This document shows positions 11,501 through 17,500 of a DNA stretch of 64,000 nucleotides, piece after piece. Within the stretch, counting starts at the first letter, position 1. Each line of letters begins with the position of its first letter. This stretch comes from Styela clava. Its lineage: Eukaryota. A program made the position numbers and the translations under genes. The notes under the pieces were generated by a model. It was not told the DNA's origin, did no database searches, and was given only the letters and a program-made list of their open reading frames with translations. The stretch is taken from positions 3,968,001 to 4,032,000 of the forward strand of contig NC_135264.1 in the NCBI RefSeq assembly GCF_964204865.1, read 5' to 3'.

Positions 11501-14500
11501 CGTATAGTGTACCAGGGGGTACAATGAATACTGGGACTGATGGAGACTACTTAACGCGCCCAATAGCCTATTTAAATTAGACCCGAGCTGCTTATGCTGA
11601 TTCCTTAGATCGTTCGTAAGTTTATATACGTCAGAAATCTGTTTTTAATTTGATAATCTTCATACTTTGAAACAATAATTCGAATGGGCGAATATGGGGT
11701 GATATATCGTCTTTTTGCACATTATATTCAGGTGCGAATATTGCGTGATGAATAACGGCAGCGGTTTCCAATTTTTTTGTTCGTGCGGCGCCACATTATC
11801 AAGAAGGAGAAAATTACCGCGCACTTACAAGAAAAAAATGATGCTTTTAAATAAAACTCAATTTAGTGATCGTTAATGTGTACGTGTACTTCATGCCATT
11901 GTTTGTAAACATGTGGGCCAAAAGTATAAACTCAAGAGGTCAAATCTTCTTTCTCATCTCTGCCTGATTTTCCTTCGAAATGCCAAAAAATCACTCATGT
12001 TCACTAAACTCGGTTCAGCAGATAAATAAGTACAGCTTGCGAAATTGCAGCAAGTAGTGTCTATCTCTATTGTTGCGTAACAATAGAAGTAGACCCTACA
12101 TAACACAAAGTAAAATGAATTTATCGATCCATATACAAATCATTAAAAGGCAACTCTCCTCTCTTTCGCGGCACACCTTTTGGGAACCGCTGAATTATTA
12201 TATTTATTTTGGTTGACGATTCGCTATTTTCTTGATATTTTCAACAGAAATTTATATTCATAAAAACTATATATAGTCGTCATTTCAGCAGGGACAAGTG
12301 GGCCGGATGAAACACTTCGGTGGGCCGAATCCGGCCCGATTCCAATACCAAACCTAAGTTAAACATACACTGAACTCATATTACCAAAATCGAACTCGCC
12401 TAAGTTTTAACCGGTTATCAAATTTGATTTACAGTACCATCATTATACACTTACGCGTCTGTACAATGTGCTGCGGTGAGAACCCAATCGTTCAGTATGA
12501 TCGATCCTCCACATGTCATTCCTCGAAGTTCAACCCACAAACTTGCCTGAAGTAAAATTCATTATAAACCATCGTTTCGAAACAGAAACCAGTAACGTTA
12601 GTTTTATATAATACAACAATTGTTTAGTTTTAGGCTTATCATTAGTTACATTCGAATTCGTGAAGTTTGCCTACAAAATGTATAGTTTCTGTTAACATAT
12701 CACATATTGTTAATAATTAGGATAAGTTGAGATTGAAGTGTGGCATGCAAAATAAAACTGAAAGCATTAAAACGTTCTCGTCTTTGGTGACTTTATAAAA
12801 AGAACAAGAATCTGCAGACAAAATACACTGACTTCATGCACATGCAAACAAACAAATTGATAAACCCAGTTATTAGAAAACAAAAGTAATGAATATATAT
12901 ATATTTTTCACATAGTTTATTCCACTACACATAATATCGTTTTGTACAGCGCTGTGGCTAAACTTTGTAGTAATTAAGTAATATAGGATTTCAACAGTGA
13001 CAAGTAAAACTATTTTATAACCGTACAGCTCGTGACTGACGGGGTTTAAATAAAGAGTAAATAAAAAATACGAAAAAACTGCGAGGTAATTGAATTGAAG
13101 AAGAAAAACAAGAATCAGCAAACAACACGTGAAGAGAAGTGAAATAAGCAAGAACTCAATCTTTTGACAGTTGACAATATAGAAACCAAAAAGATGTTGA
13201 CTTGTTGTCGAGCAGAGAGTTTGAAAAAGATATAATTCTTAATATAAGAACATCAAACGTTTTGTTTTTAAAATCGCATGTCAGCTGTAGTCTAAATTCC
13301 CGAATGAATACCAACAGAACTAGACACGATAACAAATTAGCTAACCACACAGGTGACTCAGGAACAAATTTTGATTTGTTTGAATAACGTCTCGTTATTG
13401 TGAGTTATTGGGAAATGTGACTTTACTATAATAAGACAAAAGATAAGTGAAGATAGGAATGGTTTTTCTTTCATGACATATAAAATGAAAAACACGACTT
13501 CTGAGAAAAGAATAACGAATTCATGTAGTTCATATGATGGAAAGAACGTACTCTCTGTTGCCAGAAGAGGAACTGAGAAAACACATGAAATCGTGAACTA
13601 CAAATTATTAGCTATGGCCCTTACCGCGTGAAGGTAAACCTGTAACGTGTTTCAAAAAAATGTTATTATATTAGTTTGCAAGCATTGGTACATAAACGCT
13701 GCTATGTGAAATAGGGCCAGGTTATGTAAGCCAGCAAGTATACGGACATAAATTAATACAAGAGCCTGCAAAAATATTTTGCAACTAATTGGTTTTATAT
13801 TCGCAAGTCATCGGGGAACTTATTGGGATATTTATAAACCAATAAAAAGTTTATTCCAATCAATTGGGAAGCTTGATTTATTGACAGACGTTTGACCTTT
13901 TATTGCTGCATATTTCCAAGTAAACATCAGTAACTCTTATATAGAAAAATATTAAAAATGATGATATACGACTTCATTATGAAACATACTGAATAGCATT
14001 TCCAAAAAGTATGAACATTTATCAAAAAACTATAACTCCAGATATATATATATATCGTTGTTTATTGTATCTAATTCAAATTGATCATGATTGCCTAAAT
14101 CGGTCATAGGTTGTATCGTTTCGGGTTGCGGATAACAACATGCATTTCCAGGGGAAACGGTTTTTAGCCCCGGGAGCGAGAATTTAAATCACCATCATAA
14201 CTTGTTTCTACTCGTTTATGCTTCGTTCGTGATTCAAACTCTGTACCTGCCAGGGAAAGCGCATCGCGGTGGTCGGTCGCCCACCATATATTCTTCCTTG
14301 TACCATTGAGCCGTCTACTAGTTCTCCGGGTGCTGTATTTTTCTGATTCGTTTTAGAAGGACCGTTTGAAGAGTTCGGGTTTTCCATCTCAAATTCCTGT
14401 GTAATATCGTATTTTGGTTTCGACTATTAGCATTTTGTTCAAATTGAATACAAGTGCGTTTAATTGGTCAGAATTTTTCGGAGGCTGATGTTGAAAAAGT

Positions 14501-17500
14501 ATGATTAATTTTTAAATGAAAGTGTAAATGTAAAGAAAAGATTAAAATGCTTTTAGGGCCGATGATATTTTGGTAATTTCTTGGACGGTATACACTGTCA
14601 TGAATACAAAACAAACAAGTCATGTTTGTAAGCTTTAATACCTTGCAATGCTACAGAATAACATCACATACAAAACTAAATAAACTTTCCATCGATATCA
14701 AGGCCGATATCGGTTAAATTCCATACTGAACTGACATGCTGGACGGAATAAAAAATACCACGCCCAGGGCACATAACATATCCATCCTGCAGATGTTTTT
14801 CTGTGAACTGCAAAACTTGGGTCTCGTTTTTGACAACAAACTCAAATGACTGTAAATCAGAACACATTTTCTGACAGGGCAAGCTATATTATTCCTCAGT
14901 AAATTAAAACAAAATTTAACGGCAATTATATCATTTATTGCCACTTCGGATTGAATTGATATAACTACAACAGAATATAAAACACAAAACATTTATTCAC
15001 CGCCTTGTTAATAAATGGGCATGTTAAAATCACCATGCAATAAAAATTATCATATTATTGTCGCATGAAAATCAAATATAAATGGTAGCATATTTGTTAG
15101 TAGTGTATTCATTTCAAAAGCAAAGCGTTATTCACCTACCTGCCAAGGATATTGTCGAATGTTCGCTCGCATTCCACCGATGATACGCGCTGCTTGTGTA
15201 ATGTTAATTCGATTGTCATTCTTTGGTGGATGTGAATTTGATAGAGAGTTATCATTTGTTATTGTCCTACTGGAAATTGACAAATATTTTGCTGGATATT
15301 TTCCACAGATCGATGCTAAATCACAGAATATGTGCATTAAAAATTTATTAGTTTTATCAAAGGAATATCAATAAGTTTAATAATGAAGAATTTCCACTGC
15401 GATTCTTAGAAATTTATAACTTGAGGATTAAGTTATTATGGTTTGGAATGTTTTATTTAGATTTGGTACAATACACTTACTTTGATTTAAAACAGTGGTA
15501 ACTTTAGGTACATCGGTTTCTGAAAAGAAAATATATATATAATTTTTTCACACTCATGAATCAAATGCTATATTCACTAAACGTTATTATGGTTTATTTA
15601 TTAATTTATCTCACCTTGCGATTCTGGAACTTTCCCTTGAACAACTGAAAAAAAATTTTTTTTTTTTATAAAAAATAATAAAATCAAACAAAACGATGAA
15701 AGGCCGAAGCAAAATATTGCCATGGTCATGAATAGCTAGCTAGAAGTGGTAATGAATACATGCTTCCAATCGGCACATGAATGGACAGTGTTGAAGAGGG
15801 CTCATTACAACATTCCTGAAAAAATTGACATCGTTTTTAACCTATGAACGACCTATATACCCCGGAATAATTTTTCAGGCACTTTGATGTAAAAAGACGA
15901 CGACTCTTTCATCTTGAAGCGTGGGAGATGATACGCTTATGGTTAAAAACACTCGTCAAAAGTACTTATTTTGGTTGGTACACACGAACCAACCTCATCA
16001 ATTAGGCTAGCTATGGCGCTTTGTCGTCTGCGTTTTTTGAAAAAGCGACAATTAGGCACTCGAGATTATGATGTTTTCCGCATTCTGACAATGGTTTCAC
16101 TTTTTAATTACATTTTATGAAGGGATGTCATTGAATGCTCTTTATTGCAGTTATATTGAAACTGATTTTCTTCCATTTCAAGTCTTAAAATTATGAGTAA
16201 TACGAAATCTAAGAATTTAGAGAAATTTCAATCTTCAAGATCATAGATCGGGAAAAACAAGCCCATGAAATGTATTTCTTGAATTTCAAATTTCTATTTC
16301 AATTACATTGGTTATACACTACCCAAGTAAGACCCAATCACATCAAAGCATGAGCTAATAACCGGACAAATATAATGTTACAAGATGTTAAGAAATCATG
16401 TTACGGTTCATCATAAATGTTTTTCCCCTGCAAACATGCTAAATATTTGTCTGGCAAAAATAGATTTTCGATATCACCAAGATCAATATTAATTTAGCAC
16501 CGACGAGTGCTAAGCATTCAGAATCGATAAGCTATAATATCTGTTGATAACTGTTAGTGCATTAAAATTGGAATAGTCTAAAATAAAAATGACGGTACAA
16601 AATATTTTTCGAAGCCAGCGTTTGATGTTTCTATTTACCGTTATGAATATATAGAATAAGTACGATCTACAATAACACTTCACAACAAGTATGGGAAGAT
16701 ATTTTTTTATTCACTTTATAAATATTTAGGAGTACATTGAGGGAATGATAATAAACGTCCTTGTTATTGTTTAGAATTTTATTTTTTTGAATAACTGGTT
16801 TTCAAAAAATGCTCATACAGTTAGACAGAACATTGTTTTATCATTTAAATGTTGTCTGTTATGTCGTCATTTTTCGTCATATGTCGTTACACCAGAGGCG
16901 ATTTCGAGCATTTAGTGGCAAAACAACCGCATTCAGGCAGATAGATGTATCTGATAACTTGTTCGTGATCCGCAAATGCTATTCGTGATTTCTCGATTGA
17001 CGGATTACAAACACTGAAAATCGCATTTTGGTCAAAAGTCCACACGAATGTTTATGATTTCATTTTTGATCGTGCAAATGCAAATATGTTTTCTTTATTT
17101 TGAGCGAACACAACTTATATGGTTTACACTGTTTTTGCTCCAACAGCAAAAAACAAAACGAAAAAAAAAATCGGAAATTTAGCGCACATGAAATAGACTC
17201 GAGCTGCTGGGATTTGAGTTCACGTTCTAAGTTATACGTCTTCTACTAAAATAAAAAATTTTGACAATTTATTTATTCACACCTACCTACTGTCGAAGAT
17301 ATGATATGGATGAGAACCATAATAAGACTATTCTTCAAAACAAATTTGAAGATATTTGCATGTATAACAAACAATTTTAGATAGCTCATTCGAACACTAA
17401 AGTCATTACTAATAATCCCCTATTACTCCGAGACGGATACCGTCTGGTTTTAGTTTGCAATATCCTGGTGAAGTATATGATACCAACACTGCTTTGACAT

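What the first reader, a model, noticed from the sequence alone, without database searches (positions are those of the whole stretch)
14247..15315. Serine protease gene carries two tandem zymogen activation exons (R|IIGG and R|IYGG)
Seen in sequence: between the normal activation exon (15315-15140, ...AAR|[15 protein letters not shown]) and the His-motif exon (12546-12455) lies a stop-free 150-nt segment with AG/GT ends encoding ...VQGR|[15 protein letters not shown]. It ends at the identical PWQ|GT boundary. It is phase 0/0, so it cannot simply replace the first activation exon, which starts in phase 1 and holds the light-chain Cys, but it can be included after it in frame. Established knowledge: S1A proteases are switched on when the new Ile16 N-terminus inserts into the fold. 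Inference: cassette splicing would let one catalytic domain use either of two activation sites and N-terminal strands (AAR vs QGR), a splice-controlled choice of activating protease. Alternatively it starts an internal isoform at MENPNSS. The ORF track misses it.
Basis: partly seen in the sequence, partly recalled or inferred. Interest (0 to 1): 0.75.

Follow-up and report, generated by a model that had tools for sequence, protein, structure and literature searches.

The report
Protease isoform with duplicated activation segment
A sea-squirt membrane protease gene can splice in a second copy of the short segment that switches such enzymes on, and because another sea squirt's version of the protein has the same doubled segment, it is probably a working feature whose function is still untested.

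Summary
On the minus strand, 14396-14247 is a 150-nt, stop-free, AG/GT-bounded segment. It encodes a second R|IxGG...PWQ activation segment between exon A (15315-15140) and the His exon (12546-12455).

It is a real cassette exon. Spliced RNA-like contigs join A>B in 4 of 4 runs and A>His in 3 of 4. No direct B>His joint was seen.

Both forms are already computed RefSeq models of Styela clava LOC120333641, "uncharacterized protein": X1 with 676 aa and X2 with 621 aa. My searches found no paper that describes them.

The Phallusia mammillata homologue, full-length alignable from the membrane helix to the C-terminal tail, has the same tandem motifs. Of 125 stored proteins, 3 have them, all ascidian.

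In X1, copy 2 plus VYLHA aligns to matriptase residues 16-35, and the AlphaFold2 (AF2) model agrees.

Best reading: splicing swaps the activation site (QAAR versus VQGR) and the N-terminal strand, and lengthens the 37-loop by 5 residues. The splicing is shown; the function is inferred.

The parts
18142..19021 (-). Exon 1, coding part. It encodes a 293-residue cytoplasmic tail with a Cys/His-rich cluster, then the membrane anchor. The donor is TTCC|gtgagt.
   Evidence: 100% tblastn match to P0004 and P0003 residues 1-293. AF2 predicts a helix at 270-296 with pLDDT 88-90. Pfam finds no family. No read evidence links it directly; the link rests on the RefSeq models.
15615..15644 (-). 30-nt stem exon (phase 1/1), encoding ..VQGKVPESQ..
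   Evidence: Joint 15519>15615 in 4 of 4 runs. Splice sites. Present in P0004.
15481..15519 (-). 39-nt stem exon (phase 1/1), encoding [12 protein letters not shown]
   Evidence: Joints 15315>15481 and 15519>15615 in 4 of 4 runs.
15140..15315 (-). Exon A, constitutive. It carries the tethering Cys (SICGKYP), activation site 1 (QAAR|IIGG) and copy 1 of residues 16-30 ([15 protein letters not shown]).
   Evidence: In X2, Ile361 aligns to residue 1 of the matriptase catalytic chain.
14247..14396 (-). Exon B, alternative cassette of 150 nt (phase 0/0). It encodes a 35-residue linker, activation site 2 (VQGR|IYGG) and copy 2 of residues 16-30 ([15 protein letters not shown]).
   Evidence: The A>B joint is in 4 of 4 runs. 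100% match to P0004 residues 375-426. Absent from P0003.
13625..13639 (-). 15-nt micro-exon encoding VYLHA. It was seen only together with exon B and supplies residues 31-35 of X1.
   Evidence: Flanked by ttacag| and |gtaagg. Joint 13637>14245 in X2. X9 has a joint 12547>14245 with 12 letters between. X1 and X3 have matching loose ends. Present in P0004 at 426-430. PWQVYLHA aligns to matriptase PWQVSLHA.
12455..12546 (-). His exon: [35 protein letters not shown] forms residues 31-35 in X2 and a loop insertion in X1.
   Evidence: (Trypsin profile 20-44).
11083..11239 (-). Catalytic exon carrying Asp102 (..YDYDVSLMK)
   Evidence: Joints 11239>12455 and 10533>11083 in 4 of 4 runs. tblastn.
10413..10533 (-). 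Catalytic exon (LETPLTF..QPICIP..), carrying the Cys expected to pair with the stem Cys
   Evidence: Joints. Trypsin profile 94-132.
10143..10291 (-). Catalytic exon (QANAPK..KDACQ), carrying Asp189
   Evidence: Joint 10289>10411 (cut +2) and the loose end at 10142 that runs into the Ser exon. Trypsin profile 135-177.
8511..8667 (-). Ser exon (GDSGGP..WIWTEIG)
   Evidence: (Trypsin profile 178-220).
8227..8291 (-). Last coding exon (KSEGWIEDNTPTSSGDGSTD, then stop)
   Evidence: Read. Matches the C-terminus of P0004. The GK[SA]EGWI tail is shared with Phallusia. It lies outside the stretch where reads were laid.

Best explanation
The gene is Styela clava LOC120333641. It encodes a membrane-anchored trypsin-like (S1A) protease with a long cytoplasmic tail, one membrane helix, a short stem without recognisable modules, and one catalytic domain.

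Shown:
- Exon B and a 15-nt micro-exon form a 165-nt in-frame alternative cassette.
- Skipping it gives isoform X2 (621 aa), a canonical zymogen. Its site is QAAR|IIGG, and [20 protein letters not shown] forms residues 16-35.
- Including it gives X1 (676 aa). X1 has a second complete copy of residues 16-35 (VQGR|[20 protein letters not shown]) between copy 1 and the rest of the domain.

Inferred:
- In X1, the copy joined directly to the core (copy 2 plus VYLHA) builds the N-terminal strand.
- X1 is then switched on by a cut at VQGR|IYGG.
- Copy 1 and the 35-residue linker stay in the pro-region, which is held to the domain by a disulfide.
- ASLWV becomes a 5-residue extension of the 37-loop, next to the primed-side substrate and inhibitor surface.

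On this reading splicing changes three things together: the P4-P1 activation motif, the inserted N-terminal peptide, and a specificity loop. The enzyme has Asp189, so it should cut after Arg. Either site could therefore be cut by the enzyme itself or by another trypsin-like activator.
For: RNA:
- Spliced contigs of four RNA-like runs from three studies show A>B in 4 of 4 runs and A>His in 3 of 4.
- All 4 runs show the micro-exon letters after B. The micro-exon>His link is seen in X9 and X3.
- Six further GT..AG introns of the gene are removed in all four runs.

Gene models:
- RefSeq X1 and X2 differ by exactly these 55 residues.
- They map to the window exon by exon at 100% identity.

Conservation:
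- The Phallusia mammillata homologue has ..SSR|[15 protein letters not shown]-19 residues-VQSR|VMGGEDAIVPWQ-VSLWL...
- Copy 2 keeps Arg15, a hydrophobic residue at 16 and 17, Gly18-Gly19, Pro28-Trp29-Gln30, and a VQ[GS]R motif at P4-P1.
- Tandem motifs occur in 3 of 125 stored proteins, all ascidian.

Fit to the fold:
- Pfam Trypsin covers profile positions 1-220 from residue 411 in X1 (209 bits) and from 361 in X2 (214 bits).
- X1 412-654 aligns to matriptase 2-238 (E 5.9e-52), with PWQVYLHA opposite PWQVSLHA and ASLWV as the only insert there.
- In the AF2 model of X1, pLDDT averages 86 over 411-420 and 94 over 421-430, and is below 50 across 321-409.
- Model residues 411-657 superpose on matriptase residues 16-244 with Z 37.3 and rmsd 1.3 A over 235 residues.
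- The Phallusia model behaves the same way.

Active-site motifs: TAAHC, DYDVSL, D-A-C-Q-G-D-S-G-G-P and QPICIP are all present.
Against: - There are no protein-level data. Nothing shows which Arg-Ile bond is cut, or that X1 is active.
- The AF2 result was predisposed. In the alignment I supplied, homologues occupy copy 2 at 0.92, copy 1 at 0.44 and ASLWV at 0.01.
- Copy 2 is less conserved than the rest of the domain between the two ascidians: 5 of 15 identical, with 3 gapped positions. Copy 1 has 11 of 15 and the rest of the catalytic domain 108 of 196.
- Phallusia's copy 2 is only 12 residues long instead of 15, and Pfam matches that protein only from profile position 12. Canonical insertion of that N-terminus is therefore doubtful.
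- Tyr at position 17 is unusual (recalled, not tested).
- Only one other species could be examined. I did not verify whether the Phallusia protein comes from mRNA or from a gene model.
- The evidence comes from contigs, not raw reads. Isoform ratios, tissues and transcript ends are unknown.
Confidence: 0.55

Rival explanations
1. Either-cut switch. In X1 the two copies of residues 16-35 compete for the same place in the fold. Whichever copy is freed by a cut at its own Arg-Ile bond docks, because only a free Ile16 amino group can pair with Asp194. One zymogen could then be activated by either of two activators. If copy 1 docks, the 55 residues of B plus the micro-exon loop out between residues 30 and 31.
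For: - Both copies are full-length in Styela: 15 residues each, followed by ASLWV or VYLHA.
- Both isoforms match the whole Trypsin profile with near-equal scores.
- Copy 1 is the better conserved copy, 11 of 15, and is still present in X1.
- Phallusia's copy 2 is short.
Against: - A 55-residue loop inside the first strand has no support from any call.
- AF2 leaves copy 1 below pLDDT 50 in both species, although the alignment predisposed that result.
- The high conservation of copy 1 is explained more simply by its role in X2.
Confidence: 0.15
2. X1 is a poorly activatable or inactive form. It would be a regulatory, decoy or dominant-negative isoform. The insert spoils the N-terminal strand or the 37-loop, and splicing tunes how much active enzyme is made.
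For: - Copy 2 evolves faster than the rest of the domain and is 3 residues short in Phallusia.
- The 431-440 block has lower confidence, pLDDT 63.
- Tyr17 is unusual (recalled).
Against: - Copy 2 retains exactly the residues needed for cleavage and insertion (R, hydrophobic-x-G-G, P-W-Q) and a VQ[GS]R motif in both ascidians. A mere spacer would not be expected to keep them.
- X1 keeps the triad motifs and Asp189.
- X1 aligns to active proteases with a single 5-residue insert.
Confidence: 0.15
3. Two-cut activation with a released peptide. X1 is cut at both sites, as coagulation factor IX is (recalled). This frees the 50-residue piece 361-410, which may have a role of its own, while copy 2 activates the domain.
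For: - Two Arg-Ile bonds lie 50 residues apart.
- The tethering Cys lies upstream of both.
- Asp189 predicts cutting after Arg.
Against: - Nothing shows that either cut happens.
- The linker is poorly conserved: 10 of 35 identical, with 13 gapped positions.
- This is an elaboration of the best explanation rather than a true alternative.
Confidence: 0.08
4. Dead exon duplicate, or splicing noise. B would be a decaying copy that is included by accident.
For: - Its acceptor has a weak pyrimidine tract and its donor, gtacag, is weak.
- Copy 2 diverges quickly.
Against: - B is included in 4 of 4 runs from three studies, and in X3 only the inclusion form was assembled.
- It is open, in frame, and coupled to an in-frame micro-exon.
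- The same tandem motifs occur in another ascidian.
Confidence: 0.03
5. Internal isoform that starts at MENPNSS from a promoter in the A-B intron.
For: There is an ATG 9 nt into exon B, and the ORF from it is 59 aa.
Against: - Every contig that reaches the 5' end of B continues into exon A.
- Depth is zero over 14400-14799 in all four runs.
- Such a protein would lack a membrane anchor, a signal peptide and the tethering Cys.
- Contigs cannot show transcript starts, so this is not excluded outright.
Confidence: 0.02

Closest known systems
Matriptase (ST14) and other type II transmembrane serine proteases (TMPRSS6, TMPRSS11D/E, TMPRSS2, TMPRSS13, hepsin, enteropeptidase)
   Same: - Best solved-structure matches by sequence: X2 at E 7.8e-54 and X1 at E 5.9e-52.
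- Best by fold: Z 37.3, rmsd 1.3 A.
- N-terminal cytoplasmic tail, one membrane helix and a C-terminal S1 domain.
- An Arg|Ile-x-Gly-Gly activation site, and a Cys before the site for tethering.
- The P3-P1 residues Q-[GS]-R of site 2 resemble the RQAR and RQSR motifs of matriptase and TMPRSS2 (recalled).
   Different: - No SEA, LDLa, SRCR or CUB module in the stem.
- A 293-residue cytoplasmic tail.
- An alternative cassette that repeats residues 16-35. None of the 119 non-Styela hits other than Phallusia shows this.
Polyserase / TMPRSS9 (the automatic name of the Phallusia protein, and the top hits)
   Same: More than one activation motif in a single membrane-anchored chain.
   Different: Polyserases repeat whole catalytic domains, each with its own His, Asp and Ser. 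Here there is one His motif and one Ser motif, and only about 20 residues are repeated. The high scores of the TMPRSS9 hits come from several domains matching one query.
Coagulation factor IX or X activation peptides (recalled)
   Same: Two basic cleavage sites lie tens of residues apart, upstream of one catalytic domain. The light chain stays disulfide-linked, and only the downstream cut creates the residue-16 N-terminus.
   Different: In those factors the upstream site is not followed by a copy of the catalytic N-terminus, and the peptide is not an alternative exon.
Alternative reactive-centre-loop exons of insect serpins (for example PMC10513286; search listing and abstract only)
   Same: Duplicated exons plus alternative splicing diversify the specificity-determining part of a protein in a protease network.
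   Different: In serpins the exons are used one at a time. Here A is constitutive and B is added after it, so both copies sit in one protein.
Engineered 'alternate frame folding' proteins with a duplicated segment (recalled, not searched)
   Same: A duplicated stretch gives two mutually exclusive ways of completing one fold.
   Different: Those are designed proteins. Whether X1 can use both frames is untested.

Membership tests
S1A chymotrypsin-fold serine proteases (Pfam PF00089 Trypsin) | Trypsin domain above Pfam's gathering score | tested here: met
   X1 scores 209.3 bits over 411-651 (profile 1-220). X2 scores 213.7 bits over 361-596 (profile 1-220). The cut-off is 20.6.
S1A chymotrypsin-fold serine proteases (Pfam PF00089 Trypsin) | Catalytic triad His57, Asp102 and Ser195 in their motifs | tested here: met
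   TAAHC at 454, YDYDVSL at 505 and GDSGGP at 604 of P0004. Identified by sequence only.
S1A chymotrypsin-fold serine proteases (Pfam PF00089 Trypsin) | Zymogen activation site Arg/Lys|Ile-x-Gly-Gly, with Asp194 as partner | tested here: met
   X1 has two such sites (R360|I361 and R410|I411) and X2 has one. Asp605 precedes Ser606. Cleavage itself was not tested.
S1A chymotrypsin-fold serine proteases (Pfam PF00089 Trypsin) | Two-barrel fold | tested here: met
   AF2 model residues 411-657 superpose on matriptase 3so3_A residues 16-244: Z 37.3, rmsd 1.3 A, 235 aligned. This is a predicted model.
S1A chymotrypsin-fold serine proteases (Pfam PF00089 Trypsin) | Proteolytic activity | not testable with these tools
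   Needs an enzyme assay.
Type II transmembrane serine proteases | Cytoplasmic N-terminus and a single signal-anchor helix upstream of the protease domain | tested here: met
   Hydrophobic stretch [23 protein letters not shown]. AF2 predicts a helix at 270-296 with pLDDT 88-90. Phallusia has a helix at 237-265. Topology was not tested.
Type II transmembrane serine proteases | Stem region with SEA, LDLa, SRCR, CUB or similar modules | tested here: not met
   Pfam finds no family in exon 1 or in the stem. About 65 residues separate the helix from site 1.
Type II transmembrane serine proteases | Disulfide from a Cys before the activation site to Cys122 of the catalytic domain | tested here: inconclusive
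   Both cysteines are present: C320 in SICGKYP and the Cys of QPICIP at 525-530. Both are conserved in Phallusia. The pairing was not tested.
Polyserases (TMPRSS9 type) | Two or more complete protease domains in one chain | tested here: not met
   The gene has one His motif and one Ser motif. In one search, P0004 has two activation motifs (360, 410) and a single His motif (454).
Mutually exclusive tandemly duplicated exons | Exactly one of the duplicated exons is present in each mRNA | tested here: not met
   A is in both forms and is spliced directly to B. X1 contains both copies. The phases of A (1/0) and B (0/0) differ.

The most novel reading that the evidence does not exclude
X1 is a natural 'either-cut' zymogen. 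Two copies of the N-terminal strand (residues 16-35) compete for one catalytic core, and the copy freed by its own activator docks. One membrane protease would then integrate two upstream proteolytic signals, and splicing would decide whether the enzyme has one input (X2) or two (X1). This would be a natural counterpart of engineered alternate-frame-folding switches, kept since before the two ascidian lineages split.
Probability: 0.15. Interest if true: 0.85.

Novelty: new variant of a known kind. Interest (0 to 1): 0.6.

Why it matters
In this large enzyme family, activation depends on a single cut that frees residue 16. The surrounding residues decide which upstream protease can make that cut.

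This gene offers two versions of that switch, chosen by splicing, and the longer version carries both switches in one protein. I found no description of such an arrangement.

If the second site works, this is a compact way to rewire a protease cascade without duplicating the gene. It is also a natural test of how tolerant the N-terminal strand and the 37-loop are.

The system is directly testable with two recombinant isoforms and two point mutants.

The limits are that both isoforms already exist as computed RefSeq models, and the function is unknown.

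Tried and rejected
Searches that found little or nothing:
- Exon 1 in the 90%-clustered protein set: 0 of 516 candidates scored. The length window excluded the full protein.
- Region 318-430 of P0004: only the Styela cluster, 1 of 34 candidates. 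No further orthologues were found, so conservation rests on one other species.
- The list is filled by multi-domain TMPRSS9 proteins whose scores add up. Any other single-domain ascidian orthologue scoring below the 120th listed hit would not have been shown.
- Pfam on exons A and B alone found no Trypsin match, because the 15-residue N-terminal piece is too short.
- P0002 (Logan, unnamed organism, 403 aa) matches exon 1 at 39% identity. In this genome it matches only exon 1 itself, so it is an orthologue from elsewhere, not a paralogue.
- Exons A and B have no paralogous copies in the genome.
- No convincing intron-pairing elements: only short AT-rich inverted repeats of 75-87% identity.
- HrTTSP-1 of Halocynthia is a different protein of 337 kDa with EGF and ricin domains (passages of PMC9265791).
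- Literature searches found no description of this gene or of a duplicated activation segment. For some searches I saw listings and abstracts only.

Readings rejected:
- Mutually exclusive use, because of the phases and the A>B joint.
- Polyserase remnant, because there is no second His or Ser exon.

Full report
**What is in the sequence.**
The window is AT-rich eukaryotic DNA, 30-39% G+C. On the minus strand, exon A (15315-15140) encodes ..SICGKYP..NITQAAR|[15 protein letters not shown]. Segment 14396-14247 is exactly 50 codons and encodes [35 protein letters not shown]|[15 protein letters not shown]. The His exon (12546-12455) encodes [30 protein letters not shown].

Segment B has an acag| acceptor and a CAG|gtacag donor, and exon A ends the same way. 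The full activation motif occurs twice in the six-frame translation of the window, both times here. It occurred on average 0.0 times in 200 random windows of matched first-order composition. The window holds one His exon and one Ser exon.

B is unique in the genome, and so is A. The two copies share 7 of 17 residues and 24 of 51 bases, so the duplication is old.

**The gene.**
A search with the 293-residue first exon found P0001, 676 aa. Cluster look-up names it Styela clava LOC120333641, 'uncharacterized protein', isoform X1. P0004 has the same length and is the version that matches the window. P0003 and P0005 are isoform X2, 621 aa.

tblastn of P0004 and P0003 against the window places the exons at 100% identity. 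The coding exons on the minus strand are:
- 19021-18142
- 15644-15615
- 15519-15481
- A, 15315-15140
- B, 14396-14247
- micro-exon, 13639-13625
- His exon, 12546-12455
- 11239-11083
- 10533-10413
- 10291-10143
- 8667-8511
- 8291-8227

These rest.

The protein has a long cytoplasmic tail and one membrane helix (AF2 helix 270-296, pLDDT 88-90). Its stem has no Pfam module. It has one trypsin-like domain with TAAHC, DYDVSL, Asp189 and GDSGGP. By layout it is a type II membrane serine protease with a minimal stem.

**RNA evidence.**
Nine runs of the same organism look like transcriptomes. Each has 53-79 million letters of contigs, against 316-363 million for the DNA runs. The tool calls their RNA status a guess. 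I laid four of them (X1, X2, X3, X9; three studies) on 10000-15999. All four carry contigs with the gene's GT..AG introns removed, so they are spliced RNA.

- The A>B joint (14395>15139, cut +1) is in 4 of 4 runs. In X3 it covers 151 letters on the B side.
- The skip joint A>His (12545>15139, cut +1) is in X1, X2 and X9 but not in X3.
- No direct B>His joint is listed.
- Instead, B is followed by a 15-nt micro-exon. X2 has the joint 13637>14245 (cut +2). X9 has a joint 12547>14245 with 12 letters between. X1 and X3 have loose ends with the same letters.
- X3's loose end at 12547 reads from the His exon through the micro-exon into the end of B.
- Those letters match 13639-13625, flanked by ttacag| and |gtaagg, and encode VYLHA.
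- No A>micro-exon joint is listed. In these contigs, B and the micro-exon go together.

These are contigs, so they give neither ratios, tissues nor transcript ends.

**What the cassette does to the protein.**
- X2 aligns without a gap to the mature matriptase chain: 361-599 against 1-238, E 7.8e-54. Ile361 is therefore residue 16.
- X1 aligns from 412 to matriptase residue 2, E 5.9e-52. PWQVYLHA lies opposite PWQVSLHA, and ASLWV is a 5-residue insert.
- Pfam Trypsin covers the whole profile from 411 in X1 and from 361 in X2.
- AF2 of X1 gives mean pLDDT of 86 over 411-420, 94 over 421-430 and 63 over 431-440. It is below 50 across 321-409.
- The model's 411-657 superposes on matriptase 16-244 with Z 37.3 and rmsd 1.3 A over 235 residues.

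This AF2 result was predisposed. In my alignment of 56 proteins, the homologues sit on copy 2 (occupancy 0.92) and almost never on ASLWV (0.01). Chain connectivity points the same way independently, because copy 2 is the copy joined directly to the core.

**Conservation.**
Among the 120 listed hits for residues 318-656, the only one covering 100% of the query besides Styela itself is Phallusia mammillata CAB3267126.1 (A0A6F9DVX4), 657 aa. It aligns from the membrane helix to the GK[SA]EGWI tail, 43% identity over 444 columns.

It reads ..SSR|[37 protein letters not shown]|VMGGEDAIVPWQ VSLWLKVKG..TCGG. It has no counterpart of VYLHA.

A motif scan of all 125 stored proteins finds two activation motifs without a His motif between them in 3 proteins: the two Styela X1 versions and Phallusia.

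Identity between the two species, by segment:
- copy 1: 11 of 15
- linker: 10 of 35
- copy 2: 5 of 15, with 3 gapped positions
- His exon: 20 of 30
- rest of the domain: 108 of 196

Copy 2 keeps Arg15, the hydrophobic pair, Gly-Gly, Pro-Trp-Gln and VQ[GS]R. Those are the residues an activation segment needs. However, copy 2 is short in Phallusia, and Pfam matches that protein only from profile position 12. AF2 of the Phallusia protein again leaves copy 1 disordered and copy 2 mostly confident. I did not verify whether that entry derives from mRNA.

**Interpretation.**
*Shown:* a real, in-frame, alternative 165-nt cassette. Both products are already modelled in RefSeq. The tandem motif is shared by two ascidians. 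From memory, they belong to different orders.

*Inferred:* in X1, copy 2 plus VYLHA forms residues 16-35. Activation needs a cut at VQGR|IYGG. Copy 1 and the linker remain in the tethered pro-region. ASLWV lengthens the 37-loop.

Splicing would then change the activation motif, the inserted N-terminus and a specificity loop at once. I put this at 0.55.

Rivals:
- an either-cut switch in which either copy can dock (0.15)
- a crippled regulatory isoform (0.15)
- two-cut release of a 50-residue peptide (0.08)
- noise or a dead exon (0.03)
- an internal start at MENPNSS (0.02)

**Comparison and novelty.**
- The enzyme is an S1A protease closest to matriptase and other membrane-anchored relatives.
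- It is not a polyserase, because only about 20 residues are repeated.
- It is not a mutually exclusive exon pair, because A is constitutive.
- I found no paper on the gene or on a duplicated activation segment.
- Because the isoforms exist as computed models, the new part is the recognition of what the cassette encodes and that it is conserved. I rate it a new variant of a known kind, interest 0.6.

Noticed in passing
window 14211-14246 (minus strand, just after exon B's donor): The frame of exon B stays open past its donor and reads [12 protein letters not shown] before a stop. VQSLN resembles the usual residues 31-35 of these proteases. Exon B may once have run on further, or may have come from a copy without this intron.
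   Followed up: no
window 18142-19021 (exon 1); P0002: The cytoplasmic tail has a Cys/His-rich cluster, [23 protein letters not shown], followed by SCPAWADG. Both are kept in an unnamed 39%-identical relative, which reads CRCTCHHTHHHHHHHTIFINGKP and SCPAWADG. This may be a metal-binding or docking motif in the tail of a membrane protease.
   Followed up: no
P0001 versus P0004: The two RefSeq versions of X1 differ at 15 residues. Fourteen are in the 293-residue cytoplasmic exon and one (E/K573) is in the catalytic domain; none is in exon A or B. The E573 allele (10235 T>C) is the one seen in all four RNA-like runs.
   Followed up: partly
window 12518-14268 versus 14400-14799: Low-depth contigs (about 2-8, on both strands) cover much of the introns between exon B and the His exon, on both sides of the micro-exon. 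The A-B intron has zero depth at 14400-14799 in all four runs. This could be slow or regulated removal of the introns downstream of exon B, or an unrelated transcript.
   Followed up: no
window 11740-12236 and 12029-12173: Two joints with short sides (21 letters) and non-canonical ends (TT..GA, GT..GC) lie inside the intron, and several loose ends cluster at 11833-12327. They probably come from a repeat shared with other loci.
   Followed up: no
P0004 residues 657-676; window 8227-8291: A separate last exon adds a tail after the catalytic domain. Its start, GK[SA]EGWI, is conserved in Phallusia. Its function is unknown.
   Followed up: no
It is a separate case of this motif being reused. I did not examine it.
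   Followed up: no
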